Source: Podarcis cretensis
Lineage: Eukaryota
Length of the DNA: 64,000 nt
Reading direction: 5' to 3'
Assembly (NCBI GenBank): GCA_951804945.1
Contig: OX638154.1
Span: 53,010,001-53,074,000 of the forward strand
The position numbers and the translations under genes are program-made. Positions 1 to 56,060 of this stretch are shown one piece after another (the first letter of the stretch is position 1; the number at the start of each line of letters is the position of its first letter). The notes beneath the pieces are model-generated. The model made no database searches, was not told the origin of the DNA, and was given only the letters and a program-made list of their open reading frames with translations.

Positions 1-772
1 GAGACAGTTCCAACCTATGTTCAAATGGACAAGCAAAGATGTGAATTAAGGTCACATTCATACCACATGGCTTCCCCCAGAGAATTCTGGGAACTGTAAT
101 TTACCTCCCACAGAGCTACAATTTCCAGAAACGCTCTGCAGGTCTGTGGCTGAGGTAGAATTTGACTTCCGGACTCTTCTGTGGTGAACCTCAGCAGCAC
201 ATCTCTCACTGCTAGATGAAAGTGAATCACTAAGTCATGCCACTATTGCACATGGACTCAGACTCAAGTGGCCACTACGCCAAACCCATCCAACATCTCT
301 GCCCCTGTCCAGCTAAATCAGAACATGCATTGCTATATCTACATTCAGGATAGCCATTTCAGTTCAATATCCATTTGTACTTTCACATCAAAAAGAGGAA
401 GGCAAATGAAGAGAGAAGGGGGAGGTGCAACAAGTAGGTTAATGCTATCCAAGCACAATCTGTATTCTTCATGACTGCTGCTCTTGGATGAACACATTTA
501 TTCAGTATCATGCTTAAATGCCAGAAAAGTAATTGTGCTCTTCTCTATTACACCTTGCTCCTAACACAGCATGCATATGTCTGAGGAAAACTCCCAGTCA
601 TTTAATCACAATTAAGAAATCGAAAAATGTTCTATCTGCACAGAGTACATACAGTAGCTTCTGGTCATGCAACCTCACCTTTCTATGCAGCCACAGATTA
701 AAAGAAAAAGAATCAATGGTTTTAACAGAGTTCTAGAATTCCCCTCTCTCAAACACTAAATTCACGGCTTAC

Positions 773-15200: not shown

Positions 15201-17812
15201 ATGTCAGCAGGAGATGCTCACATTGGGAAGCCAGCCCCAGACTTTCTGGCCACGGCTGTAATGCCAGATGGGCAATTCAAAGAAATCACACTCTCTCAGT
15301 ACAAAGGTAAGTGCAATAAAGCATGTTGTATTTGTATTTGTTGGCAAGGGTTTACTGAGGTACTGATAAGTATGTGACATGTATAAAACCCTAACTTAAC
15401 TGTCTGGACTAACAACATAACCTTCTTTGATTCTGAAATGGAAGTTTTGTTGGCATTCACAAAAATGCATTGGATAGTATTGCAAATAAGTCCTCAGAAA
15501 GTTACTAACACATCTGCATGTAGGTACCCTATTCTGTTCTAGTATGTATGTTGTCCTTGCATGTGTCACTTCTGCTAGCTTGGAAGAAAATAGTTACGAC
15601 TTTTATTTGCAGCACTTCTTTTGTTTATTTGGAGATCAAGGAGAGAAGAGAGCATGGGTGGGAAACTTTCAGCCTACAATCCAAACTAGGCTCACTAGGC
15701 TGTCCTATATGTGACCTCAGGTGTGGCAGATGCCCAGGGAGTTCAATCCTGCTTTGTGATGTATACAGTGGTACCTCTGGTTATGTACTTAATTCGTTCA
15801 GGAGGTCCGTTCTTAACCTGAAAATGTTCTTAACCTGAAGCACCACTTTAGCTAATGGGGCCTCCCGCTGCCTCCACATTACCGCCGCCCAATTTCTGTT
15901 CTTATCCTGAAGCAAAGTTCTTAACCTGAGGTACTATTTCTGGGTTAGCGGAGTCTGTAACCTGAAGCATATGTAACCTGAAGCGTATGTAACCCGAGGT
16001 ACCACTGTATATCTCTCTCTTAGCCCTCCCTAGTCGTCCAACTCACCTGTCAAATCAACTGGTGGCAGTATGACATCAGATGACTGACAAGTAAGGTGAT
16101 CGTGTGCAAAGTTTGCTAGCCATGGTGGCAGAAGATAAACAACTGGCCTGCCATGCCAAAAAAGGCTCCTCACCTCTGGGGTAGAATGCCACAAAGCTGT
16201 TAATGTTTGGAATCAGAAATTTGTGACTTTTGAATTGCTTCCAGCTTTGCTGTGGTGGGAATCTTAACTTGTTACCTTCTTCTCCAGGGAAATATGTTGT
16301 GTTCTTTTTCTATCCACTTGACTTTACCTTTGTCTGCCCAACTGAGATCATTGCATTCAGTGACAGATCTGAGGAGTTTAGAAAAATCAACTGCGAAGTG
16401 ATTGGTGCTTCTGTCGACTCTCACTTTTGCCATCTTGCCTGGTAAGAATATTTGGACCTCAGCCTTTTTATTCTCTGGGGGTCTCCTACGTTAAAAGTTA
16501 TAAGCCTATTAAATGGGTGAAAGAAGTAGCTACCAACAAGTGACTATTGCCAGCTATTTCTCTCCCCCCCCAACCCATCCTCATGACCTGTGCAAGAGAG
16601 AGAAAACACCATCCTGCTCACAAATCAATTTGTGCTAGAAAGAGGGTTGGTTAAGGGTTTTTTGCCCACCCTTCACAATCCTGTTCTGATCCAGTCCTGT
16701 AGCTTTTTAAGTGTAGTCATCTTAAGTCCCTGAACTTGAGCAGCTTGACCCAATGAAGCTGCTTCTCTGGTAAGAACCATTATGGTAAGAACAACGTGGG
16801 TTTCCTTTATTGGATATTGTAAGAGCAGTGTGGAACCGGACCACTAGGAAGCTGTTCCCACACCACTCCAGTAACATGGATTGGGACTTATTCCAAACTA
16901 GTGCTTGAAACTAGACAGGAAGTTTTGGGTCACTGCCTCTTTTGCAAAGACCACTGAATCTCCTGTACTTTAGATATTCTGCTCCAGTCGAATGTGTAAG
17001 TGTACAGAAGGACAAGTATATTATTGAAATACTAACCTGCTTTATAAAATGCCTTTCTTCTTCTTGTTAACAGGATCAACACACCCAAAAAACAGGGTGG
17101 ACTAGGCTGCATGCGTATTCCCTTGGTGTCTGACACAAACCGTGAAATTTCTAAAAAGTATGGAGTATTAAAAGAAGATGAAGGCATTTCCTACAGGTAA
17201 GGTTACCACTGCAGCCTCTTAGTGACTTGTGGTATATAGAGCACTGCATGATAAAGGTTCTAAAAGATAAAACTTAATCAGAGGGAGAAGCCCACAGAAA
17301 ATAAGTGAATCAAGTTTTGAGTCAACATGCACACTTTACTAGCCCTGTTAATAAGGCTGCCCTTAATTATGAATGTCCTTTTCACTGGGAAGAGGAAAGT
17401 GAATGTGTGAATATGTGCAATCTCCATTTGGCATCTTCCCAGATCCGCTATCAGCACCTGGGTTGAAAAACACCAATTCAAATTTAAACTCCGTTCTTCA
17501 GAATAGTGCTAGTATCTTGTAACAAAAGTTTGAACATTCAAGTTAGAAGTCTCTTGAAGGGTGAAAGGTAAAGAGGCTGTACGTAGAAAGTTTTACCACA
17601 TTCCTTTATGAAATGTTCTATATAGGTTTTAGTGCTTGGAATTGCAAATGAGTCTCTCTATAGTTTTGCTTTTAATTTATATATAGTGTGGAAGTTGTAC
17701 CAGATCTTAAGAGAACTGGTTTTGCTGTTTTCAGAAGAACTAAAAGGGTACAGAACTTGGTATTGAATGCTAGCTTGTAGTTTTGTGTATTCTGCCACCA
17801 TACATTTAAGTG

Positions 17813-17850
<38 letters not shown>

Positions 17851-20137
17851 CTTCTCTCTTTAGGGGCCTCTTCATCATTGATGATAAGGGAATCTTGCGC
17901 CAGATCACAATCAATGATCTCCCTGTTGGTCGCTCAGTTGATGAAACACTCCGGCTAGTTCAGGCTTTTCAGTTTACAGACAAACATGGAGAAGGTAAGA
18001 CTGTCAAATTCAGGCTAGGCAAGCTTGAACTGCAGTACGTTTCTCAGTGAAAAAGGAGGATGCACTTAACAGTTCATAGCGTATCCTCTTCCCTGCAAAA
18101 GGGGATACTATGTTTAAGGAAACATAAATGTGAAAATCTAGGACTATACAGTGGTACCTTGGGTTACATACGCTTCAGGTTACATACGCTTCAGGTTACA
18201 GACTCTGTTAACCCAGAAATAGTGCTTCAGGTTAAAAACTTTGCTTCAGGTTCAGAACAGAAATCGTGCTCCGGCGGCGCGGCAGCAGCAGGGGGCCCCG
18301 TTAGCTAACCCAGGAATATTACCTCAGGTTAAGAACTTTGCTTCAGGATGAGAACAGAAATTGTGCAGCGGCGGCACAGAGGCAGCAGGAGGCCCCATTA
18401 GCTAAAGTGGTGCTTCAGGTTAAGAACAGTTTCAGGTTAAGAACGGACCTCTGGAACGAATTAAGTACTTAACCCGAGGTACCACTGTAGTTCTCTAAAA
18501 CAGTATCTCATTGATAAAAATCCAGTTCCTGAGTAGCATTTTGTATGGCTAAAAAAAAGTCCAGGAATAGGTAAATAGAAATAGGCTTTTAAGAGTCTCT
18601 GTGGTTTCTAGCCATATCTACAGGACAAATAAGAGATAGTATTGACAGCTGGTGGAGGGGCAGAACATCTTTCCACCGAGAAACTAGAGTCATAGAATCA
18701 TAGAGTTGGAAGAGACCACAAGGGCCATCGAGTCCAACCCCCTGCCAAGCAGGAAACACCATCAGAGCACTCCTGACATATGGTTGTCAAGCCTCTGCTT
18801 AAAGACCTCCAAAGAAGGAGACTCCACCACACTCCTTGGCAGCAAATTCCACTGTCGAACAGCTCTTACTGTCAGGAGGTAGACAGCAACTACTGTCCCT
18901 GTAAAGACAGTATCCCATATACACAGTAGCATTTTTCCACATAAGTGAGTAGCTCCCATTCATTCCCATGGCGTTTGGGGGCTGCTGTGTTAGAGAAAGC
19001 ATTGGCACCTCACATTATTTGCTTGTCTTCTCTGTGGGATCCTTGTTGAGGCCATTTCCTACAGAACATACCATATTTTTCCGTCCATAAGACACCCCCA
19101 TGTATTTTTGCAGCAACAACCAATCGCTAGTCCAACCTCAACACTATCCATGTATAAGACGCCCCCTAATTTTTCACATCATTTTTTAGGGAAAAAACGT
19201 AGACTCAGGGCACAACATGCATCCTTTTCTTCCCTACTGCCAACAAATAAATGTCAGTTATAGCTCATATATATTACTATTCTGCCACATTGCCACAATA
19301 TTGTGATATTCGCAGGCTCCCTTGCAAAGGTTTGTTTCCAGGTGGGCACTAAGGGCATTCCTCCTTTATCACTGAATCAAGACTTTTCTTAAAAGACCTG
19401 CATCAACCACCTATTTACTTACAGAAAGCAATATATTCTTAGTCAGTGAGATATATTTACATTAGACTCTACCCTGACCAGAACAATTAAAACAGAAACA
19501 TGTATTTACTTAAGGAACATAACGTCCAGGACTGTGTACAGACTGTTCTAACTTTCATAATGTCTATCCTTTTCTACATATGCCTCTCATTGGCTCGCTA
19601 AACTCATTCCCATTTCATTCAGTCCCTCAAAGGGACTCTTTCAGCTGTTACTTTTCAATGGACACACAATCCTAGTCTTTCGCTCTCAACTCTGGCCCAT
19701 ATTCCATCCAACCTCCCTGCTCTCAGTCATTATTTCAGTCTTCTGTTGCTGTCAGGCATTTATTTGGCTAGTAATTTATATGCATAAACTGTGAATCGCT
19801 TTGGTTTTTCCAAGAGGCGGCTGTCCTGTACAACTCAGGTACACAATTGCATCAAGAAGCCCTTCTGTAGGAGAGGTGGGGTGGTGACTGCTGCTAGTTC
19901 CAGCAGTTAGTCAAATAGATGACGGAGCTTGTAGTGATCCAAGTCATCTTGTGTGAAGTCTAGTGATGGACATAACAACTTAGTTCTTTGTATGCTGTTT
20001 TCGGTCTGTACTCCTGGAGTAACTTAAAAGTTAATATTATTATCTCCTCAGTGTGTCCTGCTGGCTGGCATCCTGGGAAAGACACTATCAAGCCTGATGT
20101 TCAGAAGAGTAGAGAGTACTTCTCCAAGCAGAACTAA
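15201..20137 (+). CDS. PRDX1: Peroxiredoxin-1 (typical 2-Cys Prx), 199 aa; coding exons 15201-15306, 16288-16441, 17074-17196, 17864-17994, 20052-20137
   Basis: Exons of 106+154+123+131+86 = 600 nt, all GT-AG. Peroxidatic [19 protein letters not shown], resolving GEVCPAGW and C-terminal EYFSKQN motifs present. AATAAA at ~20238. Confidence 0.97.
15766..16007. mobile_element. Tigger/pogo-like MITE (same family as 4223)
   Basis: CAGTGGTACCTC...GAGGTACCACTG with TA TSD. Confidence 0.88.
17816..17849 (+). repeat. (TG)n microsatellite abutting the PRDX1 acceptor at 17863
   Basis: About 17 TG units directly before CCTTCTCTCTTTAG. Confidence 0.95.
18149..18487. mobile_element. Tigger/pogo-like MITE with an internal duplication
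   Basis: Same TIRs with TA TSD; the internal ACTTTGCTTCAGG...AACAGAAAT...TTAGCTAA block occurs twice. Confidence 0.86.
18689..18877 (-). mobile_element. CR1 LINE 3' fragment
   Basis: Encodes the CR1 ORF2 C-terminal-like [35 protein letters not shown], followed by an (ATTCTATG)n tail. Confidence 0.88.
19071..19202. mobile_element. Truncated Tc2-like MITE
   Basis: TA|CCATATTTTTCCGTCCATAAGACAC end resembles the 51540 element. Confidence 0.5.
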
Positions 20138-22084: not shown

Positions 22085-22566
22085 TTTATCCCCCTTGCCC
22101 TGCTTCCATGGGTGCCTCTAAGAGGACTGGCTGGAATGGGCTGGCACACACCCAAGACTTCTGTAGCTGTTTTCTATTTTCTGTGAGCTTTGTACCCAGG
22201 GCTGAGTGTTCTTTGGCTCTCCTTTCCTTCTGATTCTCCATGTTTGGTATCCTCACTTGCCGTCATACTAGTCTTTGCTGTGTTACACACCTGTGAAGGT
22301 AATAATAGGCATCTGGTGTATCACACAGACAAACAGAATTAACGGCTAGAAAAATTAGAGGGGAGCTAACAAAGGCAGTTGCTATTTCTTCTTGTGTACA
22401 AGGAGTAAGATTAGTGAGGATTAGGAATCAGAAGAGCTTCATACTTCTGTACCAAGAACAATTGCCACATTGATCCTTGCATGTGGAGCGCACAACTTTT
22501 CAACATCATTATGATATTGGCAGATAACACTGTAGATTATGGATGTAGAAATCTAGCTTACCACAC
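22085..22566 (-). pseudogene. Decayed partial tandem duplicate of SELENOP2 (copies of the last two exons at ~22445-22566 and ~22085-22290)
   Basis: 22445-22566 gives CGKLDFYI...VE..VVRSTCKDQCGNCSWY, with frameshifts and a stop, versus CSRLAFHI...VEAAVRYTHSKDYCGNCSWY. 22290 starts after the same acceptor TTACCTTCACAG and gives VCNTAKTSMTASE versus VNKTASTNVTTTE. An intronic block is also shared (22375-22404 vs 28519-28545). Confidence 0.8.
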
Positions 22567-24454
22567 CTCCAAAGCACGTGAAGATAAGCAGGATAAGAAC
22601 TGGTGCCACAAAACCTGGAGATTAATCATGATGCTTTTAAAAATTATATGTTGTAAGCTGTTCTTAAAACTTTTTTTGTAGGTGTGGGATTTAAAATTGC
22701 AGAAAGTTGCCATTAAAGTTGCAGCAACCCATACCTAAAACAAAAATAAAATATTTAGATGTGCTGGAGAAGACTGTTCTTATTTTTAGGAAATGGCCTG
22801 TTGAGTTTTGAGCTCACAGCTAGTTTTCAAATGTATTTCATGCAAAAATAGAATCATATACATTAGAGTGAAGTAATTATTCTTACTGTATTTTATGAAG
22901 CTCTACCAATATTTTGTAGAAGCTATACAATATAAAACCTACATATTCATGAGAGAACTTCTGAGTTGTCGGTAGAAATATTGTTTAAAATGATGATTTG
23001 AAATAATTTCTTAAACTTTTCTGAGCTCCTCATTATAAAATGAATATCACTGTAAACCAGAAGCATACTGCTTTGAATTATTTGATAAATGAGTTTTATA
23101 CTTGGGAATTACATGTGAGGACTCTTATTTATACAACAGATGGTGAAAGATTCAAAGCACAATCCCATGCATTCGTATCCAGAAGAAAATCCTAGTGATT
23201 TCAGTGTGCATGTAAGATTTTAATCAGTATGTAGAAGATTGCAAACTTAATGAATACTCAAACATGGCCTATCTATAGGGAATGACTCTTAAATAAGTTT
23301 TAGAAACTCATTAGCATGTTGGATTTTATATTGTATCACTTATGTAAATACTCCTGAATACTATATGAACATAACATTCCAATGGAAGCAATTATTCTAC
23401 ATGCGTAAACTTTAAATGTGCCAGACCATTTTCTATAAACGAGTTTCTACTGCACTGTTAGACATTTTAATTGAATAATGAAGCCAGTTAGCAAAACCCC
23501 TCTGAATTGGCTAGATAGGCTTTTGTTTCTTTTTACTTCACTGCCCAACAGGGGAAAGTGGATTGGGCAGGGAAAGGGTACTTAAGAGGCATTAAAGCAT
23601 ATTTACCCCTCAGCTGCCTCCTCCGTTGCTGATTAAAGTCTAATGCTGTCCCACTTTTGAGGCTTCCAACAGAAGTACTACATCTCCTAAATGCAGCCCA
23701 TAGTGTGAATTCCATGGAGAAATAGACATGGACACAGCCTCTCCTTCCCTCCTCATCTCTCTCTCTCACTCACTTACACACACACACACACACACCATTC
23801 TGCTTTTCATTCTTTCGCTGATCCCTCAGATGAACAGGGTTAAAGGGCCTCTAGAGCAAATGACAATGTTAAGTAGAAGATAAAAAAGCTGTACAGATGT
23901 TTACACAACCTCATGGTCCTTGGTGCTAGTCAAGTAAGAGACAAGCTTATGGGTGCAAATGCAGGGGGAATTGTAAACAGAGCATACATGAAGGGAGGAA
24001 GGAGGACTGTTCCTCACAGACTGTAGCCTAGCAAATTTTATCACTCCTTTCTCTGTGTGCTATACTACCCACCGTGTAGACTCGTGTAGGTTTGATTTTT
24101 AAGGCAAATAATCAGAAGGGTAAGAGGATCCGAACCCTCCTTCCACTCAGTACTTAATTTTCCATAGTTCCCTGCCAAAACGCTTCTCATCCAGTCAAAG
24201 TCACTTCCAATATCCATGGAGAAAAATTATTGGAGGGGAAGATGTTAACATCAATAATATTGTTACTGCTTCCCTCTGGAGAGCTTTAACAATAAAAATC
24301 TGTGGGAAAGGCTTTGCTGTTCTACCAGTTCTACCCTAAATGCTAAGGCTCCTTTAACTGAGTATCTATTTGATTTGATTCTGTAATCAAGCAGTCAAAC
24401 AAAACCCTAATGCGATTTAGTGCCAAGGCAAAATACATGTAATACTAAAAATAG

Positions 24455-24580
24455 TTTTATTATTTGCACCCCACCCATCTGACTGGGTTGCCCCAGCCAC
24501 TCTGGGCTGCTTCCAACATATATAAAAACATAATTAAACATTACAAAACTTCCCTATGCAGGGCGGCCTTCAGATGTCTT
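24455..24580 (-). mobile_element. LINE (L2-like) 3' fragment
   Basis: Reverse complement of the AAGCCACCCAGAGTGGCTGGGG tail seen at 43078-43120. Confidence 0.65.
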
Positions 24581-26666
24581 CTTTTTCCATTCGCAATGGG
24601 ATTGCATCCTCCACCATGCCTGAGGGCAGCAGGGGAGGCTGTGTGTGGCACAGGCAATTCTCTTCCAACATCTTGCCTCCACTTTTATCCCCCTAGCATC
24701 TACCACCTGAGGTGGCTGCTTCACTCTGCCCAATGTTAGGGCCAGCCTTGTCCATCAAAAAAAGACTACGCCTGCAATGCTATAGCCACATACTTGGCAG
24801 TAAGTGCCATAGAACTCAAATGAGGCTTTATTCTGAGTAGGCATAAACAGGCAAACTATAAGAGATTTTCTGGCTGCTGCAATCAGAGAGGCCAGTTTAA
24901 AGAGGATCTTTAGCAAATATTTGACCTGCATGTTAGATGAGATTAGCATTAAACATGATAATAATAGTCTTGCTCCAGTTTTGCTGTGAACCTGTGGACT
25001 CTGCTGCAAATGTAAGCAAACAGGACATGACGCAAAGGAGTTTAGTTTGGATAATGGGAGCTGTGGGCTGGGGCAGAGGGCATCAGGAAAGCTGGATCAG
25101 AGCCCAAGGCCAGCATTAGGTAGGAATGTTGTTGTCCTAAGCAAAACATAATTTTGACCAACTTTTTTTAGCACTGGTACTACTGAAGATTTTTTCTTTG
25201 GTAATTAATAGTATGTAATACTGTACATAGAAATAAAGGGAAGAGATTGTAAATATAATTGGAATGTTAAAAAAAACCAAAATAAGCCAGCCATATAATT
25301 ACTTTGGTTGGTACAAAACTATCAGCAAGAAAATATTCTCTTAACAATTATGACCTAGCTGTTGTAGATTGGGCCTCTACAGATTTCTGGGGGGCAGGGA
25401 TGGTTTCAGCTAGGTATTTACATAAGTAGGAAATGAACTAAAGGAACATAAAAAGGGAATGGAACAGCATGTGGGAAGGACAGCTAAATCTTTGCATGTC
25501 AGTTGGGCAAGTAATCAAATATTACACCAGATCATAGCAGCTACCATACGGCTGCACGGTGGGGTGGGGATATTTTTGTTTGTTACTACGTTATGTATTG
25601 TGGAGAGCAAGATTGCTAAGAACATTAAACTAGTTGTTAAGCAACTAAGGCTGCAAGTTGAATCACAGTTGCGAGCATTTTATTTAGAGTCCATTGTGCT
25701 GGTTATGCCCTGGGTGAAGGCGATTACTTATACGACATATTACCAAAAGCTATAAATTATGTTATAGCTCTAATACATGTATGTTAAGAGTAGCCAGCAT
25801 GTACAGATATCAGGAGAGTTTTGATATACACAAGGGGATAAATAAATCTGCAGTAAGTATGCTGTTTACACCAAAGGTGGGTTGTTAACTATAAGCACCT
25901 GACAGCCTAATGCCCTTTTATTGCTTTGCAGAATTTCAAAGGCTGCCTTCTTCCACAAGAACCTCCTGAACTACTAATATTATACCAGGAGGCCCTTCTT
26001 CAGATCTCCCCACTTTCAGGGACTCTGATTGGGTCTTTCCAGCTATACTGCCCTATCTTTCCTAGAAAAGCTTGCCTGACACCAGCAGCAAGCCTAATGA
26101 ATATCTGGGGCCAGGTGAAGAACTGTTTTATTTCCCCAAAACTTCAAGGTATTGTGTTTTAAATATTATTTTAATCTCATCCTTTCTACTGCTACTGTTC
26201 TGTGCTGCTTTTTTTGTATGTATTGTTATTGTTTTTTTCTTTAACCAGCTAACACATAAGGGCACACACCCTGGGCTGTCATGGAATCTTATGATGTTAA
26301 GTGTATCCTATACTAACTAGGGTTACTTTGGAATAAACAGATTTTAGGTGGATACATATCAGCATTAACAATACAATAAAGACAGATTACACCCTCCCGT
26401 AAATATTTGTAGCAGTAGCTTCCTAAAACTGGGATGTGGAGGACTTGTACAGTGTGCACCCATTCACTGACCTTCAACAAATAACAGGAACCTGGACTAT
26501 TCTCAATAAGGACTGCTTAGTATGCCATAAATGCAGATAAACTATGGGGCATCTCTTAAATGTTGAAGGTGAATACGTGTTCTACAATGCTGGGTACTGT
26601 CTGAAATAAATGACACCATTTGTACATTAAGGTATTGTGAGCAAAGACTTCAAACATTTCAGAGAA

Positions 26667-26672
26667 TTTATT
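26667..26672 (-). terminator. Candidate SELENOP2 polyadenylation signal AATAAA
   Basis: Minus-strand AATAAA ~400 nt after the SECIS. Confidence 0.5.
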
Positions 26673-27072
26673 TCCAACATTCTTCCCCAGAAACAGTTAT
26701 ACTACTTTTAATCAGCAAGCAGTGCATCCCTTTCCATGAATTTTCCTGATAAATGGCATTTTCTTCCCTTGTTCAGCTCTCATAGCACTGACAAACTCAA
26801 CTCTCACCTCAGACTTCTCTGTCTTTCGTACCTCTATCAACATACCTATAAACTTGGCTAATTCTGTCTCACCACTTTCATTCCTACAAACCGCAAATGT
26901 TCTTTACTTCCAGCAACACAACAAATGTCATTTTACAAGCTAGTAATTTGTGTGCATGGACTTTAATGTACAAAATCTTGAGCCCCAGGCTCAAAGTCAG
27001 CCTTCTCTGCCACAGTCAGTCACCCTCCTGCTAATACCAGATCTGATCCCCATCCTTCCATCTCCAAGGACA

Positions 27073-27145
27073 TGCTTTTATGTACAGTGTCAGCATGTGG
27101 TGACAGAAAGTTTACATCACATGCTTCATTGAGTGCAGAAAAGCA
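27073..27145 (-). promoter_or_regulatory. SECIS element in the SELENOP2 3'UTR
   Basis: RNA reads UGCUUUUCUGCACUCA-AUGA-AGCAUGUGAUG-UAAA-CUUUCUGU-CACCACAUGCU-GA-CACUGUACAUAAAAGCA. It has the AUGA/GA quartet, an 11-bp helix II with one mismatch, an apical AAA, and helix I UGCUUUU/AAAAGCA. Confidence 0.92.
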
Positions 27146-27626
27146 GGAAATGCAAAAATGGGGTCAAAATTGGCTTCTCAAGAAGCAGCTCTGTGTTCCT
27201 GAGGAAAACAAGATGGCTTCCTTAGGCAGTCCTCACCACAGAAATGGGATGTATCTAAAAATCCATCTGAGCCCAAGAGGAACACCACCTTAAGGCTTGG
27301 TGGAATAAAACTGGTGCATATGAGGTTAACTGGGAGACAGATTCAAAATGAGGATAGAGGTCTCATTGTGGACAAGCAGTTAAACTTTCCAATCACATAT
27401 ATGACACTACAAAAGTTTGTGTTGTGTCCTCTGCTATCTGTTGAGAGACCTTGAACGTCTAGGGAGTGGAACATTCACTTCCCTTCCCCTGCTGAAAACT
27501 GAGCCATCATATTTCTTCCTTCTGATGCATGTAGGTTTGCCCCCTGGCTCTTCTTAAAAGCTTGCTTAGTGCTAAGTATCCTTATGGCTAACAGTTGGGT
27601 GTTGCACACATTGAAGTTTAAATGTT

Positions 27627-30600
27627 TTATGGGGATTCCCTTGTTTGATGCTTCTGTGAGCGATTCTGAGAGTGGAGAACTGGCTGGTGTGTACTGCTCA
27701 AACCCAAGGCTTTATGGTTGCCGACTCCTCCATGATATGAATAGTGATGGGCTGTGTGCTTGGTGTTAGGTGCTTCTTGGCTTGGCTCATCATGATGGTA
27801 CCTGGGTTCTTCCAGGTGCTTCTCTTTGTGTCCAGATGCCTCAGTTGTCGTCACGTTAGTACTTGCTGTCTTATTCACCTGTGAAGGTAATGAAAGATTC
27901 TATATATGTACATGCAGATGGGCTTAGGGTGAAGACAGAAACACATTTTTAAAAGTGAAGATGGATGTATATATCTGAAGTGATCTGCATTCAGCCCTTT
28001 TTGACAAAATATGTAAACTTCCAAAATAAACTGAGCTCAGAGCAACTGCTACTTTCTGTTTTCAGGAGAAATTGGCTGTGAAGAATGGTGATTGCCTGGC
28101 AGTCACTTAAAAAGTGGTTTTAAAGAATGTGTAAAATAGAAGTTTAAATGAGTAAACATGCTGGATGTTTAGGCGTAGAAATGGTTTTTAAAAGCCCAAC
28201 GTTTGAGAGGCAAAAAGCTGCACAGGAGTTTAAGCCAAGTATATATATCTCTCAAAAGAGCTGGGAGGAAAGAAGGTTTGATTTCTCCAGATCAGAAAAA
28301 CCTGCACCCGCTCTTGGAAGGAGATCTGTTTGACTTCACTCTCGGTATGGTCGAAATGGCTTAAAAGGTATTTATAATATTTTGCTGCCTTGGCTATCAG
28401 GACAGCAAAAAACTAAAATAGGTAATACATCAGCCCCCCCCCCCCCCCGCAATCCCACCTTGAGGAATGAACTTTCAGATCACTGATGGGGCAGGAAGTG
28501 ACACCACAGGACAAGACAGCAGTTACTATTTCTTCTGTCCAAGGAACAATATGCTCCCATTCATTGAGAACAGGAAGCACTTCAACCTGACAAATTAAGG
28601 CTGTTAATTTCTTTTTTTTTCAATAACTGAGGGCAGACTATGGCTACTGGGTGAGGCTCAAGCAGTACATGATGGCAGAAGATCCAGGTCTTGACCCACC
28701 ATGTACAAAACAGGAAGGTGGGGTTGACTTTAGAGATAAGGGGTGCCTGGGTGAGAGGAACCAAACCTTTCCTGCACTTGATGCCACACAGCTTCTGTTC
28801 CAAAGTGTTTTTCTTCAAGTCAATCTCACTTTTAGTATCTGAACTCAACTGGGGAGAAAAGCACTTGGGGGAGTGTGAGAAGCTGAAAGTGGGGGGGGGG
28901 GTAGTTTAGCATTTCCTCCCACCTGGGTTCTCCTGGACCCCTCCACGCTACACTATCTGTGACTGCGGCAGACCTGGTGTCTCCATCTGCAATTTGCTTC
29001 TGAGGTTTTTATTTCAAGATGGTTTACTTCCTGTCGAGATGAAAGATGCTTTGTGGTATCTCAACATCCTTGCTTGTTGTAGCGGCCCAATATAATAAAA
29101 CCCTCCCTTCCACCTTCTCCTCCCACATCCCTGCTGTAAGACCAATCTGATCAGAAACCTAGAATTCCCAGGCAGAAGTTCAGGATGGGCAAATGAGGAA
29201 ACATCTGGCTTAAACAAAATGAGTTGAAAAGGAAGTTGATGAGGGGATTCAAGTCCCTACCTCCTGGCTGCTGTTAGAGGGGTACCAGGAACAATTGCCG
29301 CAGTAGTCTTTGCTGTGTGTGTACCGCACGGCTGCTTCAACATAGGGCAAGTGCAGAAAACTGTATGGCAGCTGGATGTGGAAAGCCAGCCTGCTGCACC
29401 TGCAAAGCCCGAGAGCCATGAAACAAATGGACATAAAGTTAGTGTCAGGAGAGCATGTAATCCACTAATTTACACTGGAAATGAATCTAACCTGGCCTGA
29501 AGAATCTGGTTTTCATCACCAACAGTTGTGAGGCATGATGGTAAAGAGAAACACTTACATCATGGTATGTCCTTTCTTTCCAGATGTGTCCTCAAACAGA
29601 CTTTTTGATAATGTATTCAGGAATCCCGAATTCCATATATCTTACTTTCCTTCCTTCTGCCCAGGCCTGCAGACCCCCATTGGCCTCCCATCAGCAGCTG
29701 CCTATGGAGCAACCCACTTCTGCCCCCACTAGTGCTGCTGATGGGATCCCTACTGGTGGCAGCAGGGGCTTTCAGTAGCCAAGGAAGGAGCTGGACTGAG
29801 CCGCCTTGCAGTCCATTGGATCCTGAGATGGTCCCACTGCCAGAACTGGGCTTCTTCCAGGCTCAATTGCTGCACCAGCTCCAAGCTGGCTCAGTGATCT
29901 GCCTTCCCTCCCTTCTGCCCCGGCTGCTATGCACAGCAGTGGCCCTGACTCTCCAAAAACCCTAATCAGTCTTGGGTGGGTGGGGAGTTAGAATTGCTCC
30001 CTTAAGCACTGACCTGTCATAGATCAGGAAGTCATCCTTGTCCCCATCTAGAATTTGCCAGACGTCAGGCTCCAGAATCTGCTGCTGGTAAACAGGAACT
30101 CCCTCTGGGGCATGCCGTTTGAGCTCCCAGTACATAGCCCTGGAGAAAGGAGTCTTCTCATTCACAATCATGAAGCTGACATTGGTCACTCCTTCAAGTG
30201 ACAGCTTCCTCTGCAAGCTGCCAAGGCTGGTGGGTAGGAAGAACAAGCAACGTTTAGGAATTGCGGTGCACAGATATAGGTTCCAGCCCTGCCCTCTACA
30301 CATACCATGTGGGATATGAGCCTGCACTGCTGGACGGAGGCCCCTTCATTTATCAGTTCACTGGACTTGCAATTACAGCGGTCCCTGCTACATAGATCCA
30401 GCAATAAGTTAAATGATACATATTATGCTTGAGCTGTAATTCACCAGGAAAATTGGATCTACCTTCTATATGTGTGTTATATCTGGCCTGCTGCAGCCCA
30501 GGCCTCAATTTTTGATTGCTGAACTGGAGCTTATAGACAATCAGTTCAGTTCTGTGTTTCCTGGTAGAAAGCCTAGGGGCAAAGATGTGACCTTAAGAGT

Positions 30601-31076
30601 TGTGATATTGCCACTGAACACCAGATACAGGGTTCCAACACATATCTGACTTTCTAGTCACATCCAGACCATCTTTTTAAAGCATGCGACTTTCCCCAAA
30701 GCATTATGGGAACTGTGATTTACCCCCTGACAGAGCTACAGTTCCCAGCACTCTTAAACTACAGTTCCCATGACTCTTTGGGGAAAGCCATGTGCGTCAA
30801 ATGTATGGTGTGGCTGCGACCTAACAGCTCCTGACTCAGGCAATCTTCTCTATGAACTCACCTGGCGGCCTGCTTGAGACAGAACTGTCAGCTGGCTTTC
30901 AACAGTGCCACCACTGTCACTTGGCCCTCCATCCCAGCCATGGGGGCCACCCCATTGATCTTCCAGAGTGGTGCAAGCTGGCATATTTGGGTCCTGTTCT
31001 CAGCCACATCTGCCAGCGTAGCAGCAATTGCCAGGAGCAGCAGCAAGGTTGTTGTGGCTAGGGCTGAATAGCCCAT
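27627..31076 (-). CDS. SELENOP2: Selenoprotein P paralogue (SelPb / SELENOP2), 272 aa with a single Sec at codon 63; coding exons 31076-30862, 30226-30014, 29399-29261, 27878-27627
   Basis: Signal peptide, then GQVTVVALLKAS-UGA-QFCLKQA (UxxC), VYQQ...DVWQILDGDKDDFLIYDRC, YVEAAV...YCGNCS and a His-rich tail. Exons 215+213+139+252 nt are in phase with GT-AG sites. SECIS downstream; no Sec-rich C-terminus. Confidence 0.93.
30655..30818. mobile_element. Palindromic MITE-like element (related copy ~55-150)
   Basis: Inverted arms CTTTCCCCAAAG...TGGGAACTGT / ACAGTTCCCA...CTTTGGGGAAAG. Confidence 0.6.
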
Positions 31077-31139
31077 CCTGGCCACCTCCCTTCAGCCTAA
31101 AGTGGAAGAGAGCAGCTTAAGACCATAAGAACTTCCCTC

Positions 31140-31230
31140 GGGGGGGGGGGTTGAAGGGCAAAAAATAATGAATATGATATGTTTTGATAATTTGTTATGT
31201 TGAAATTGTTAATAAAAACTTTTTTTAAAA
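31140..31230 (+). mobile_element. Severely 5'-truncated non-LTR (L1-like) 3' tail insertion
   Basis: G-run, AATAAA and A-rich end, flanked by the 13-bp direct repeat AAGAACTTCCCTC (31127-31139, 31231-31243). Confidence 0.7.
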
Positions 31231-31467
31231 AAGAACTTCCCTCAGCAGGCCAGATGCAGCCTCTAAGTCTCAGTAGACTTTCTTCTTAGTAAACATAGAT
31301 AGGATTGTCCTACATGGATGCCCTAGTGCCCTGTATTTGAAAGTGACAGTAATGGATGCTTAAAGACACACTCACATATTAGCTGCCCAGGATTTCAGCT
31401 ACAGCAAGGGTTGTTGCTATCCTCTGGCCCTCTGGATATTGTTGCAGTACAACTCCCAGCATGGTCA

Positions 31468-32760: not shown

Positions 32761-35674
32761 AGTATGCCTAGTACTGTGTTGTCCCACCATAATTTGATGA
32801 GTAGATAGGGCCAAGGAAGGAGTCTGGCAGCCAAGCACTCTGGTTTGGCAGACAATGGTGAAGACAACACAATCTGGACTGGAACATGCCTCAAGCAGAA
32901 AGTGGGATCTAAAAATGAATGCAAGCAAATATCTAGACCAGACAAAAGCAATCAGGTAAGCCGCAGGCCACAAGTCAATTCACATATGTAAGACACATAT
33001 AGGCACCCTATTGCTTTTAGAGGATATTGGCCCCATTTTACAAGTGGGACACAGCACCCTATATGAGTCAGATAACCATGGGAGAGAATGCACAAATAGT
33101 TAAACATTAATAAAGAGTGTGCCTCTGAGCATATTCAGAGTAATTCCCCATGCTGCTTAACAGCTGCAGCTTCCCCTTCCTCCCTGCACTTAGAATTTAG
33201 GAATAGTGTGCATCTGAGAATAAGTTTTCACTTGTTACTAAACAACTGCAGTTTTCCTTTCCCTATACTTTTATAAATACAAAGCAGGGCTGATGATGTG
33301 ATGGCATGTTTCCTACACAGATGAAGGCTCCAGTATAAGTTTTGCTAGAAATTAAGAACTGTTCAAAAAGCAAAGAGGGAAAATAGCACTGCCTTCCTTT
33401 GTTGTCAGCAAACTAAAACAAGAGAATTCTCATGTGCAGCTTACGCAACAAACTGTATTCCTAACCCAGAGCCCCCTGTTTACTGACATTCATCCTGATT
33501 TGCTTGCACAAAGCTTACACAGAAGTTATACTTTAGCTAGTCTTTGCTGAGTATTCATTCTGATTTGTTTGCAGGGTAGTTAGTTATATGAGAATTAGCA
33601 TCCATTCAGATTTGCTTGCAGGGTGTTTATACGTCTTCCCATTAGTCATTTGCTCATTGCACATGTTTTCAGTGCATTTCCCCATCACTTTCCAAACTGC
33701 AAAAAGTCTGGTGTTTTTGTGTGAAGTGGATTTGTTGCCCAGAATCCTTTAATCTGCTTTAACTGTGCAAATCTAAATTTCCAGCATGTATTTGCATCCC
33801 TTCTGCAAGATAGTGAAAGTTCGGAGGCACCGTTAGTTTCTCCCCCACATTTTTTTACAGCTCTGGCTGCATTCACATCTAATGCTAAGCAAAGCCATAG
33901 TTTAGTGTGAACTGGCTGCTGGGGAGAAAATTACAGCTGCTCCTCTGTGGCCCCTTTAGCTCAGTGGGGTGCAGCACCAAAGCCAAGGGTGGCTTAGTGA
34001 GTTGTCTGAACTTGGGATACGGATTAAGCTCTTGCCTCCTTAACAATTATCTACAGTACAGCCAAGATTTGTTACTGGCTACATATTGCAGCTTAGTTAC
34101 CCAACTGAGCTAAAAAGCCTAGGGAGGAACAAAACAGGTGAAAGCTCCTCTCTGGGAGCCAGCCTATTTTGCACAGTCCTGGTGAGCCACACACATTAGT
34201 CACATGGATGAAATCTCAGCAAGAGTCTTGTTGCTTTCCAACACACTGGTTAGAAAAGGAAACACACCCAAGCCTTGTTAAACTTGTAAAAACAAGCCAC
34301 CGAAACCCAGCATGATTCAGCCACACCACCCTAAACTCTCAATAAAAATAGTTATTTAGAAAGCCCTTGTTGATCCCAGAAAGTGGCAAAACAGGGAAGG
34401 CAATGCCTTTGGTTGGGCCAAATCTTGGCAGGATGTTCCCCTCCCCTAATTGTCCTCTGGAACAGGGTCCAAGCTTTTGAGTCCACCATCAGAAGCAGTG
34501 GCGCTTGCATTCTAAAGCTGGTCACAACGTCCCCGTCATCCCCTGCTTGCCACCACACAGGCTGTGTGCAATTCCCTCCCATATACTCCCCATATCCAAG
34601 AAAAACAGCCTTGGGGTGGTGGCAGTAGATTAGGAACAACTCAGAGATCAGATAATGCTTATCTTGGCAAGATTCAAAACCTCTCACAGTCTCACCCACA
34701 AAAGGTGGTTCAGTCAAAGGTGATTTGACACCTTGCCAATGTTGGGCCTCTCAGGAATCCACCAAGACTTTGTTCTAGGAAGCAGTAGCACAACTTTGCC
34801 TTCCTTGTTTGGAACCTTTCTGCTCTAACTTCATTGTGATAAATATTTCTCATGAGCCTTCAAAGCACCAGCTATATTGACCAACTGCAGAAATTGAACT
34901 TAATAGACATTGCCACCCCCCCTTCCCAACAAGTCTGCACCAAGAATTCCCACCAGGTGATACTCTGCCTTTTCTCAGGTGACTCCAGCTGTTGTTCTAC
35001 TCCAATCTATGACAGTCTTACTGTAGCTCTGTTCTCTCAGATCTCTTATCCCCAGGCTGGCTGTGGCGTACTTTATCTCTCATTCAAGGTCTCTCCACCC
35101 AGAAGGGGCTGGGAGAGAGGAGGTGCTTGGCTGGGGGCTAGATACACAGATGTCCTTGAAGAATTTCAGAGCAGCATGAATTGCGTTCACCACTGCCATA
35201 CACCCAGCGGTACTTGTTTTTCATTCAGAGACATCACATTCAGGAACTGAAGAAATACCATGCAGTGCCAGGCAAGGAACACTGGAAAGCATTATGCTCT
35301 TGGAAGATGACAGGACTGCATCCTGGGAGTTTTCAGTTACATTGAGGAATACATTACTGGTGTGATGAGATGGGCTGCCTTGCTATAAAGCAAAAGGAAG
35401 CAATTGTTACAGGCTGGCTATTTTTCTAGAAAAAGAAGTGCCGGAACTCACCATGAATGCCTCCATTGTTCTCTTATCATGGCAACGGTGTCCGCCTGAA
35501 AGATGCTGGAACTGAGTTCCGGTGAGTTCTGGATGAAAAGAAGCTCTGGTTATAGGCAACAGATTCCAAAAGAGACAAACTGTACCCACTCAACTTGCAT
35601 TATTGTGATGGGGTGGTATATGTTGACTTTTTGCTTCAGATGAAAAATTGTTTTAAGATTAGTAAGTAAAGATA

Positions 35675-38459: not shown

Positions 38460-38559
38460 CCTTCCCCACCCCACAACAACTGAGCTGGCTTTCTTTTCTG
38501 TTTCTGTAGGTTTAGCAGCAAAAGTTGTGTTACCATTGACCACCCTTTCAAACTGCATA

Positions 38560-39762
38560 ATGCCTGGTCTTCTGAACCGGATGTGCCACATTGGGTTCCA
38601 CGTCCCTGAAGGGCAACAGCTGGCCAGCAACCTGGTGCGCCAGTTTGGATTCGAGCTGTTTGCTGCACGGGGGGCAGAATGGAGCAGGCAGATGGCCTTC
38701 CGGAGAGGGGATGCCGTTTTTCTCGTCAATGAAAGGCTGAAGTCTGCCAAGAGAGACGCTCCACCTGTGCCATCTTCAGGCTGCCGCAAGGATAAAGGAA
38801 TTCTGTACGACGTGGACCTAGAATACGCCGTCAGTACAGCCTCCAACATTTGCTTTGAGGCAGAAGATGTACCTGGCATCTCCCAAAGCCTACAGGAACG
38901 AGGATGCCAGATTCTCATCCCTCCCACAGCCGTGGGAGATGAAAATGGCCACGTCACTTATTCAGTAGTGGGATCCATCATAGGCAACATCAGCCACACA
39001 CTGCTTGACAGATCTCGGTACAGTGGACCGTTCCTGCCTGGTTTCCACATGGTGGAGGGTGCTCCCAAGGTCCAGGTGGGTGGCCGGGTGACACATTTTG
39101 ACCATATCACCTATGCTTGCCCCCAAGGTAGCTCGCAAGCTGTGTTGGACTGGTACAAGAACTGTTTGGGATTCCAGCGCTTCCCCATCCACCAGCAAGA
39201 CAACGGTACTGATGGTTATACAATCCAGGGAGCTGGTATGGGTCTTCGTCTTACTGCCATGCAGTCCAATGGGAGCGATTCGACTCAGCTTTGCAATGAC
39301 TGTAAAATTATTCTAGCTGAGTCTCTGTCAGAGCAAAAGAAGAACCAGGTGGATACTTTCTTAGAGCAGCACGGTGGATCGGGCATCCAACACGTGGCAC
39401 TCTACACCACAGGTATTATAGGGGCCGCTGCGGCCATGGCCAGATCTGGCGCAAACTTTTTCAAGCCCCCCTTATCATACTACAGTGAGAAAAGGAAGGT
39501 GGAGGAGATAAGGCAAGCTGGGCAAAATCTTCAGCTCCTGAAGGACCACGGTATCCTTTTGGATGCTGGCGTAGGAGGCAACGGTGGCTCTGGAGGCCTT
39601 TGTGAGAAGCAATACCTCATGCAGATCTTCACAAAGCCTCTCTTTACAGAGGATACTTTCTTCCTGGAGCTTATAGAGCGATGTGGGGCCACAGGTTTTG
39701 GCGAGGGAAACATTCGTGCTCTCTGGCAGTCTGTACAAAACTATATGGACCAGCAAGTTTGA
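38560..39762 (+). CDS. HPDL: 4-hydroxyphenylpyruvate dioxygenase-like protein, 400 aa, single coding exon
   Basis: First ATG at 38560 in the 411-codon ORF. HPPD-family motifs CHIGFHV, FDHITY, GIQHVAL, LMQIFTKPLF, FFLELIER.GATGFG.GNIRALW; adjacent to MUTYH. Confidence 0.95.
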   Translation: MPGLLNRMCHIGFHVPEGQQLASNLVRQFGFELFAARGAEWSRQMAFRRGDAVFLVNERLKSAKRDAPPVPSSGCRKDKGILYDVDLEYAVSTASNICFEAEDVPGISQSLQERGCQILIPPTAVGDENGHVTYSVVGSIIGNISHTLLDRSRYSGPFLPGFHMVEGAPKVQVGGRVTHFDHITYACPQGSSQAVLDWYKNCLGFQRFPIHQQDNGTDGYTIQGAGMGLRLTAMQSNGSDSTQLCNDCKIILAESLSEQKKNQVDTFLEQHGGSGIQHVALYTTGIIGAAAAMARSGANFFKPPLSYYSEKRKVEEIRQAGQNLQLLKDHGILLDAGVGGNGGSGGLCEKQYLMQIFTKPLFTEDTFFLELIERCGATGFGEGNIRALWQSVQNYMDQQV

Positions 39763-55620: not shown

Positions 55621-56060
55621 GAAGGTCTTTCGAAAGCACCTTCTGGGAGGAGGTATTGTGCTCAGCGGTTTCTTGTGCAGACGATGTGCATTCTCCTAAA
55701 CGAGTTAGTGGCCAGGGACCAGGAAATGGTGGTGGAGCGGAGGTTTAAACTTGATCTTACCTATAACGTGCATGTTATGGATCATGTACTGATTACTTTT
55801 TACTGTTCCCGTTCTAGTTCTGGTTTGAGCTTTAACGAGATGAGGCATTTACTATACCTGGGGCTCTTGGGTTTTTTGCCATATAAAGCAGCGGTTCCTA
55901 TTCTCTTTTTTTCTGAGGTGTTGTTATTTGATATATGCAGGGAGCAATCTGTGGGTTCGGGTTTTTTTAATTAGTCATTGGTATCCCCAAAGCAAAATTA
56001 ACCATTGGATTGTAAAAGTTATGCATGTCTAATCTCTTGTGTCCCAACAGCTGCATAAGG

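What the first reader, a model, noticed from the sequence alone, without database searches (positions are those of the whole stretch)
27073..31076. Stop-codon recoding system hidden from the ORF track: UGA-selenocysteine plus SECIS in a single-Sec SELENOP paralogue
Seen: the ORF track ends 30888..31085 at a 'stop', but the frame continues (KAS-UGA-QFCLKQAAS) to a GTGAGT donor. It splices in phase through three more SelP-like exons, and a canonical SECIS lies ~500 nt after the true TAA. Known: SELENOP N-terminal domains carry a redox UxxC, and UGA is read as Sec via SECIS/SBP2/eEFSec. A short SelPb paralogue exists in fish and other non-placental vertebrates. Inference: this is a secreted, glycosylated (NRT, NVS, NKT, NVT), His-rich redox protein without the Se-transport tail. 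Automated annotation could easily truncate it.
Basis: partly seen in the sequence, partly recalled or inferred. Interest (0 to 1): 0.8.

Follow-up and report, generated by a model that had tools for sequence, protein, structure and literature searches.

The report
Single-selenocysteine SELENOP2 (SelPb) gene

Summary
On the minus strand, an ATG at 31076 opens a frame that meets a TGA at 30890-30888. The frame then continues (QFCLKQAA) to a GT donor at 30861 and splices in phase through exons 30226-30014, 29399-29261 and 27878-27627 (TAA). That gives 272 codons with Sec at 63, in a UQFC motif.

- **Family:** Pfam SelP_N hits the pieces collinearly, and the 10 residues around the UGA fill the profile gap exactly.
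- **Transcripts:** Spliced contigs from three RNA-like runs (three related organisms, three studies) show all three predicted junctions to the base. A DNA run shows the unspliced locus.
- **SECIS:** A SECIS-shaped hairpin lies at 27144-27074, with AUGA 27129, AAA 27113 and GA 27091, about 500 nt after the stop. It is the only hit of a simple SECIS descriptor in 128 kb. Rfam's SECIS_1 model gives only 16.5 bits, below its threshold of 35.
- **Paralogue:** There is no Sec-rich tail, no SelP_C hit and no second convincing SECIS. The neighbours are PRDX1, an HPDL-like gene, a MUTYH-like gene and a TOE1-like gene, which fits the published SelPb locus.

SelPb/SELENOP2 has been described in non-placental vertebrates since 2008-2012. 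This is a correct call of a known gene, of low novelty. I made no tree against SELENOP1/2, because operator rules excluded joined-protein searches.

The parts
34969..35000 (-). 3' end of an upstream non-coding exon (inferred). The exon ends at 34969 and is followed by GC rather than GT in this genome.
   Evidence: The 4132-nt spliced contig of run X4 carries 118 further letters upstream of 31098 (table 7). 27 of them match here with 1 mismatch, against 0 expected by chance. Sequence read. This is seen only in a related organism's transcript.
30862..31096 (-). First coding exon: acceptor AG at 31098-31097, ATG at 31076 in a good Kozak context (A at -3, G at +4), hydrophobic signal-peptide-like N-terminus, donor GT at 30861.
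   Evidence: Pfam SelP_N profile positions 3-36, E 7e-9. Junction 30862/30226 in X1, X2 and X4.
30879..30890 (-). UQFC motif: TGA (30890-30888, codon 63, Sec), then CAG TTC TGT.
   Evidence: The 10 residues U-QFCLKQAA-S fill exactly the 10 SelP_N profile positions (37-46) between the hits of exon 1 and exon 2.
30014..30226 (-). Coding exon 2 (thioredoxin-fold part of the SelP N-terminal domain).
   Evidence: SelP_N positions 47-116, E 1.7e-24. Both junctions are seen in spliced contigs.
29261..29399 (-). Coding exon 3 (Cys-containing part, CGNC).
   Evidence: SelP_N positions 118-161, E 1.3e-14. Both junctions are seen in spliced contigs.
27627..27878 (-). Coding part of the last exon: His-rich (12 of 83), sequons NKT, NVT and NRS, TAA at 27629-27627. 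No further UGA and no Sec-rich tail.
   Evidence: No SelP_C or other Pfam hit. Contigs run continuously from here into the 3' UTR.
27074..27144 (-). SECIS element: helix 1 27144-27131 / 27087-27074; AUGA 27129-27126; helix 2 27125-27115 / 27102-27092; apical-loop AAA 27113-27111; GA 27091-27090.
   Evidence: The MFE fold reproduces this architecture. Rfam SECIS_1 aligns full length with AUGA, UAAAC and CUGA in register, but at 16.5 bits against a threshold of 35. It is the only hit of a SECIS descriptor in the window on either strand; random sequences gave 0.18 hits per 64 kb at loose thresholds and 0 in 100 at the observed quality.
26640..27626 (-). 3' UTR of the main transcript form. AATAAA lies at 26673-26668, and contig depth drops below about 26570-26730.
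   Evidence: table 2. A lower-depth form continues beyond 26400 (X4 record 22, X1 record 1).

Best explanation
The stretch is the SELENOP2 (SelPb) gene of a non-placental vertebrate. It has four coding exons on the minus strand, and probably a non-coding exon about 3.9 kb upstream. It encodes a 272-residue protein made of a signal peptide, the thioredoxin-fold SelP N-terminal domain with a U63-x-x-C66 redox motif, and a His-rich C-terminal region without the Sec-rich selenium-transport tail. The UGA at 30890-30888 is decoded as selenocysteine. The mRNA carries a kink-turn SECIS hairpin in its 3' UTR, about 1.1 kb downstream of the UGA in the spliced mRNA. In vertebrates such a hairpin recruits SBP2 and eEFSec with Sec-tRNA[Ser]Sec to the ribosome. 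Shown here: the gene structure, the splicing, the family homology across the UGA, the presence and uniqueness of the SECIS-shaped element, and the synteny. Inferred from established knowledge: actual Sec insertion, secretion, glycosylation and redox function.
For: (1) Pfam SelP_N hits the three N-terminal pieces in strict order, at profile positions 3-36, 47-116 and 118-161 (E 7e-9, 2e-24, 1e-14). The gaps equal the number of residues at the UGA segment and at the split codon.

(2) Spliced contigs in X1, X2 and X4 (three organisms, three studies) join 30862/30226, 30014/29399 and 29261/27878, with GT..AG ends on the minus strand. One 4132-nt contig (X4 record 22) spans all four exons, the UGA, the stop and the SECIS. 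The DNA run X17 holds the unspliced locus with 0 differences.

(3) In these relatives the exons differ far less than the introns. Exon 2, exon 3 and coding exon 1 show 0-3 differences each (0-1.3%), against 3.3-4.9% for intron contigs (table 8). This indicates purifying selection on the exons downstream of the UGA.

(4) The SECIS features are all present: AUGA, a helix 2 of 8 bp + mismatch + 2 bp, AAA 12 nt after AUGA, GA directly after helix 2, and a helix 1 of 10 pairs in 12 positions. It is the only descriptor hit in 128 kb and sits on the right strand inside a roughly 1-kb 3' UTR. The two listed differences in relatives within the element (27086, and an insertion at 27106) fall in the internal loop and the apical loop.

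(5) There is no second in-frame UGA and no SelP_C hit, and the frame ends at TAA.

(6) The neighbours are PRDX1 (45 of 46 residues aligned to human peroxiredoxin-1, one conservative difference, E 7e-25), an intronless 411-aa glyoxalase-fold ORF that I read as HPDL-like, HhH-GPD/FeS exons that I read as MUTYH-like, and CAF1-family exons that I read as TOE1-like. To my knowledge these genes lie together at human 1p34.1. PMC6301783 reports that the SelPb locus is syntenic with a human chromosome 1 locus that lacks SelPb.

Against: Rfam SECIS_1 scores only 16.5 bits (gathering 35), with E 0.79 even in a 141-nt search, and nothing reaches gathering score in the whole window. The hairpin's folding energy is not unusual (z -1.48). 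I set the thresholds of my descriptor scan after seeing the element, and a first, stricter version missed it. The runs are only guessed to be RNA, they come from related organisms rather than demonstrably from the window's own species, and they are contigs, so they give no quantitative expression. I could not read the relatives' base calls at the UGA itself, because 123 difference rows were not shown. I made no alignment or tree against named SELENOP1/SELENOP2 proteins. Sec insertion itself is not shown.
Confidence: 0.93

Rival explanations
1. The UGA is a real stop. The locus would then make only a 62-residue peptide or be a decaying pseudogene, and the SECIS-like hairpin would be a chance structure.
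For: Rfam SECIS_1 is below threshold. The hairpin's energy z-score is only -1.48.
Against: The frame after the UGA stays open across three introns for 209 more codons and carries strong, collinear SelP_N homology. The exons downstream of the UGA are more conserved than the introns in relatives. All splice sites are intact and used. A stop 26 nt before the first of three downstream junctions would make the mRNA a target of nonsense-mediated decay, yet the spliced contigs carry high word depth in three runs (contig depth is a poor measure of expression). The SECIS descriptor hit is unique in 128 kb and correctly placed.
Confidence: 0.03
2. It is the multi-Sec paralogue SELENOP1 (SelPa), with its Sec-rich tail missed by the model.
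For: Both paralogues share the SelP_N domain, the UxxC motif and the exon structure (PMC6301783). No tree was built here.
Against: Transcript contigs run from exon 4 straight through the TAA into the 3' UTR without a further junction. In-frame sequence after the TAA has several stops and no UGA/Cys-rich stretch. There is no SelP_C hit. Only one convincing SECIS was found (a second, GUGA-cored candidate at 26872-26837 passes only loosened thresholds). The synteny is of the chromosome-1 type (PRDX1, HPDL-like, MUTYH-like, TOE1-like), not the SELENOP1 locus.
Confidence: 0.02
3. The gene is a SELENOP2 whose UGA is decoded, but the functional SECIS is somewhere other than 27074-27144, for example further down the long 3' UTR form.
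For: The Rfam score for the proposed element is weak. A longer transcript form extends at least 1.9 kb beyond 26400.
Against: The descriptor scan finds no other candidate on the minus strand anywhere in the window. The proposed element has every consensus feature, in register with the Rfam model.
Confidence: 0.02

Closest known systems
SELENOP2 / SelPb (selenoprotein Pb) of fish, birds, reptiles, monotremes and marsupials
   Same: [quoted passage not shown] It is about 270-280 aa, with four coding exons after a non-coding exon, at a locus syntenic with human chromosome 1 (PMC2397514, PMC3316567, PMC6301783, bioRxiv 10.1101/2025.05.29.656587).
   Different: I found nothing substantive. The motif here is UQFC. 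The first intron appears to start with GC in this genome. A decayed partial duplicate of exons 3-4 lies about 5 kb downstream.
SELENOP / SELENOP1 (SelPa), the plasma selenium-transport protein
   Same: It shares the N-terminal domain, the UxxC motif, the exon phases, the signal peptide and the His-rich segment.
   Different: SELENOP1 has a C-terminal domain with many Sec residues (9 further in human, 16 in zebrafish) and usually two SECIS elements, and it lies at a different locus. None of these is seen here.
Eukaryotic SECIS element (Rfam RF00031, SECIS_1)
   Same: It shares the AUGA / GA kink-turn quartet, a helix 2 of about 11 positions, unpaired AAA in the apical loop, a helix 1 below an internal loop, and a location in the 3' UTR.
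   Different: It scores below the Rfam gathering threshold (16.5 against 35 bits). Helix 1 is interrupted by two mismatches.

Membership tests
Selenoprotein P family (Pfam SelP_N, PF04592) | Homology to the SelP N-terminal domain above Pfam's gathering score | tested here: met
   Exon pieces score 35.8, 86.9 and 54.6 bits (cut-off 23.2) at collinear profile positions 3-36, 47-116 and 118-161.
Selenoprotein P family | Sec (or Cys) in a UxxC motif in the N-terminal domain | tested here: met
   TGA CAG TTC TGT at 30890-30879 reads U-Q-F-C, falling at profile positions 37-40 by collinearity. Alignment of this U to the Sec of human SELENOP rests on my own recall of the human sequence; I did not run it.
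SELENOP2 / SelPb subfamily | Only one Sec; no Sec-rich C-terminal domain | tested here: met
   No stop codon occurs inside the translated pieces other than codon 63. The frame ends at TAA 27629-27627, and exon 4 has no SelP_C hit. The transcript is continuous through the stop.
SELENOP2 / SelPb subfamily | Single SECIS in the 3' UTR | tested here: met
   There is one descriptor hit in the 3' UTR and in the whole window. A second candidate (26872-26837, GUGA core) passes only loosened thresholds.
SELENOP2 / SelPb subfamily | Gene structure: four coding exons preceded by a non-coding exon (PMC6301783) | tested here: met
   The four coding exons are confirmed by spliced contigs. The upstream non-coding exon is seen in one relative's contig and located at 34969-35000. 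In two other relatives the contigs run unspliced past 31098, so the 5' end varies.
SELENOP2 / SelPb subfamily | Conserved synteny of the SelPb locus (counterpart on human chromosome 1) | tested here: met
   PRDX1 exon at 17859-17993. HPDL-like ORF at 38527-39762, MUTYH-like exons at 48087-53171 and TOE1-like exons at 56025-61743. That these genes lie at human 1p34.1 is my own knowledge. PMC6301783 states the chromosome-1 synteny without naming the genes in its text.
SELENOP2 / SelPb subfamily | Phylogenetic placement inside the SELENOP2 clade | not tested
Eukaryotic SECIS element | AUGA...AA...GA core with helix 1, internal loop, helix 2 and apical loop | tested here: met
   MFE structure, register of the Rfam alignment and descriptor scan.
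Eukaryotic SECIS element | Score at or above the Rfam SECIS_1 gathering threshold | tested here: not met
   16.5 bits against 35, E 0.79. No hit at gathering score. This is a database threshold rather than a biological criterion.
Eukaryotic SECIS element | Binds SBP2 and supports Sec insertion | not testable with these tools
   Needs a reporter assay or 75Se labelling.

The most novel reading that the evidence does not exclude
The decayed duplicate of exon 3 and of the start of exon 4, about 5 kb downstream (22251-22581), keeps an intact acceptor. The lower-depth transcript form also reads on past the main poly(A) site. Together these could let some transcripts end in an alternative terminal exon without the SECIS. 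Such transcripts would yield a truncated 62-residue product or an NMD-regulated isoform, that is, a lineage-specific switch on Sec decoding.
Probability: 0.03. Interest if true: 0.45.

Novelty: already known. Interest (0 to 1): 0.12.

Why it matters
This is a clean, fully supported example of UGA-to-selenocysteine recoding that a plain ORF track truncates at codon 63. That makes it useful as a positive control for the scan and for annotating this genome. It adds nothing new to biology. SELENOP2/SelPb has been described across non-placental vertebrates for well over a decade, including its single Sec, its single SECIS, its locus and its loss in placentals.

Tried and rejected
- **Rfam, whole window at gathering score:** no hit.
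- **Rfam, 1.2 kb at E<=10:** only two chance microRNA-like matches.
- **Rfam, 141 nt:** SECIS_1 appears at 16.5 bits, below threshold.
- **First SECIS descriptor:** it demanded an uninterrupted 5-bp helix 1 close to the core. It missed the element and returned one unrelated hit at 56086-56042. I replaced it with a version that allows mismatches in helix 1. The thresholds are therefore post hoc.
- **PDB sequence search with exon 2:** no solved relative.
- **Pfam on the PRDX1 exon piece:** nothing at E<=0.01. It was identified through PDB instead.
- **First translation of exon 3:** out of frame, corrected.
any search, fold or alignment of the joined (spliced) protein, and any protein read through the UGA.
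- **Not run:** the big protein search (family scans already settle the family) and the word search (single exons of 46-83 aa can only recover proteins of up to 145 aa).
- **Rivals:** pseudogene, SELENOP1 and chance hairpin were considered and rejected (see rival explanations).
Full report
**What is in the sequence**

I read 26500-31400 on the minus strand. An ATG at 31076, with A at -3 and G at +4, opens a frame of 62 sense codons (MGYSALATTTLLLLLAIAATLADVAENRTQIC...VVALLKAS). This frame meets TGA at 30890-30888, which is the stop that ends the mechanical ORF 30888..31085.

The same frame continues QFCLKQAA plus two bases, up to a gtgagt donor at 30861. Three further exons follow in phase:
- 30226-30014, LGSLQRKL...DDFLIYD;
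- 29399-29261, CSRLAFHIQLPYSF...CGNCSWYPSNSSQE;
- 27878-27627, VNKTASTNVT...QKHQTRESP and then TAA.

The lengths are 215+213+139+252 = 819 nt, giving 272 codons plus the stop. Sec is residue 63 and Cys is residue 66 (UQFC). All acceptors are AG and all donors GT. Three more sequons exist: NCS, NSS and NRS.

**Is it a SelP gene across the UGA?**

I did not build, search or fold the joined protein, and I sent no read-through of the UGA.

Pfam SelP_N (PF04592) matches:
- the pre-UGA piece at profile positions 3-36 (E 7e-9);
- exon 2 at 47-116 (E 1.7e-24);
- exon 3 at 118-161 (E 1.3e-14).

The ten profile positions 37-46 are exactly filled by U-QFCLKQAA-S. Position 117 is filled by the split Arg codon. 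Homology therefore runs straight through the UGA and across both splice junctions. Exon 4 has no Pfam hit, and in particular no SelP_C hit.

**Transcripts**

The look-up of sequencing runs gave DNA-like runs that hold 0.68-0.97 of the stretch's words (organisms D and E). It also gave many RNA-like runs (a guess on the tool's part) holding 0.19-0.25, roughly what the exons alone would give.

I laid X1, X2 and X4 (organisms A, B and C; three studies) and X17 (DNA, organism D) on 26400-31400.
- All three RNA-like runs have contigs that skip 27879-29260, 29400-30013 and 30227-30861, with CT..AC ends on the plus strand (GT..AG on the minus strand). These are exactly the predicted introns.
- X4 record 22 (4132 nt) covers all four exons, the UGA, the TAA and the SECIS in one piece.
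- X17 covers the locus unspliced with 0 differences.
- In the relatives, exon 2, exon 3 and coding exon 1 carry 0-3 differences each (0-1.3%), whereas low-depth intron contigs differ by 3.3-4.9% (table 8). The exons downstream of the UGA are therefore under constraint.

Caveats: these are contigs, not reads. They come from relatives rather than demonstrably from the window's own species. 123 difference rows were not shown, so I cannot state the relatives' bases at the UGA.

**The SECIS**

The fold of 27160-27060 (minus strand) gives the classical architecture:
- helix 1: GCUUUU.CU.G.AC / GU.CA.AAAAGC;
- an internal loop holding AUGA (27129-27126) opposite GA (27091-27090);
- helix 2 of 8 bp, one mismatch and 2 bp;
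- a 12-nt apical loop with AAA (27113-27111), starting 12 nt after AUGA.

Rfam finds nothing at gathering score in the window. At E<=10 on 1.2 kb there are only chance microRNA-like matches. In a 141-nt search, SECIS_1 aligns full length with AUGA, UAAAC and CUGA in register, but at 16.5 bits against a threshold of 35 (E 0.79). That is not significant on its own.

I then wrote a simple descriptor with four requirements: ATGA; AA 9-13 nt later; GA directly after a helix 2 with at least 9 of 11 pairs; and a helix 1 with at least 9 of 12 pairs. It finds one hit in both strands of the whole window, and it is this element. First-order Markov random sequences of 64 kb give 0.18 hits on average, and 0 in 100 at the observed quality.

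I set these thresholds after seeing the element. A stricter first version missed it, so the figures are indicative only.

The placement is what a SECIS requires: right strand, inside a roughly 1-kb 3' UTR, 497 nt after the stop and about 1130 nt after the UGA in the mRNA. The two differences listed for relatives inside the element (27086, and an insertion behind 27106) fall in the internal loop and the apical loop.

**Which paralogue**

There is one Sec, no Sec-rich tail and one convincing SECIS. The protein has 272 residues from four coding exons.

A non-coding upstream exon is suggested by the 118 extra letters of X4's contig. 27 of them match at 34974-35000 with one mismatch. The exon ends at 34969 and is followed by GC in this genome. 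In organisms A and B the contigs instead run unspliced past 31098, so the 5' end varies.

The neighbours are:
- a PRDX1 exon at 17859-17993 (+), with 45 residues aligned to human peroxiredoxin-1, one conservative difference, E 7e-25;
- an intronless 411-aa glyoxalase-fold ORF at 38527-39762 (+), which I read as HPDL-like;
- HhH-GPD and Fe-S exons on the minus strand at 48087-53171, which I read as MUTYH-like;
- CAF1-family exons at 56025-61743 (+), which I read as TOE1-like.

To my knowledge these genes lie together at human 1p34.1.

**Comparison with what is known**

- PMC6301783 reports that SelPb loci share conserved synteny from fish to chicken and that the counterpart on human chromosome 1 lacks SelPb. 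[quoted passage not shown]
- PMC2397514 states that SelPb lacks the Sec-rich region, keeps the His-rich region and has a single Sec (Cys in Xenopus).
- PMC3316567 and bioRxiv 10.1101/2025.05.29.656587 place SELENOP2 at the root of vertebrates, with loss in Eutheria.

The gene here matches every tested feature. I did not test clade membership by phylogeny.

**Mechanism**

By established knowledge, the SECIS kink-turn binds SBP2. SBP2 brings eEFSec and Sec-tRNA[Ser]Sec to the ribosome when it reaches the UGA, so Sec enters the UxxC redox centre of a thioredoxin-fold domain. The hydrophobic N-terminus (LLLLLAIAATLA, followed by DV) and the sequons suggest a secreted glycoprotein. The His-rich segment is the heparin-binding type region of SelP (PMC2397514). 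These last points are inference and were not tested here.

**Verdict**

The observation and the interpretation are both correct. The element is a known gene of a known kind, so interest is low.

Noticed in passing
window 22251-22303 and 22449-22581 (minus strand): A decayed partial duplicate of SELENOP2 lies between PRDX1 and SELENOP2. One part resembles exon 3 (67% over 137 nt, acceptor changed from cag to gag). The other resembles the acceptor and start of exon 4 (81% over 53 nt, acceptor ttaccttcacag|gtg intact). The frame decays soon after.
   Followed up: partly
window 34969-35000 (minus strand): A likely non-coding first exon of SELENOP2 lies 3.9 kb upstream of the coding exon. It was located from the loose end of a related organism's spliced contig. 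In this genome it is followed by GC, not GT, so the intron may be GC-AG.
   Followed up: partly
window 24475-26400 (approximate, minus strand): A lower-depth transcript form continues past the AATAAA at 26673-26668. X4's contig extends about 1.9 kb beyond 26400 and X1 has an 1838-nt contig there. This is either a long 3' UTR isoform or read-through.
   Followed up: no
window 30466-30800 and 31127-31232: These are high-copy interspersed repeats (DNA-run depth 5300 and 3900 against about 12 elsewhere). Contigs of organism B skip 30466-30735 and 31127-31230, so these look like lineage-specific insertions in intron 1 and just upstream of the first coding exon. Part of the first repeat also matches window 64-128.
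   Followed up: no
window 17859-17993 (+), 38527-39762 (+), 48087-53171 (-), 56025-61743 (+): The neighbouring genes are PRDX1 (convergent with SELENOP2), an intronless HPDL-like ORF of 411 aa, MUTYH-like exons and TOE1-like (CAF1 family) exons. This is a 1p34.1-type syntenic block.
   Followed up: partly
window 17800-17860: A (TG)n/(CA)n microsatellite lies directly upstream of the PRDX1 exon. It appears as CVCVCV / HTHTHT in the ORF translations.
   Followed up: no
window 26837-26872 (minus strand): This is a weak SECIS-like candidate with a GUGA core. It passes only loosened descriptor thresholds (helix 2 with 8 of 11 pairs, helix 1 with 8 of 12). It is probably chance.
   Followed up: no
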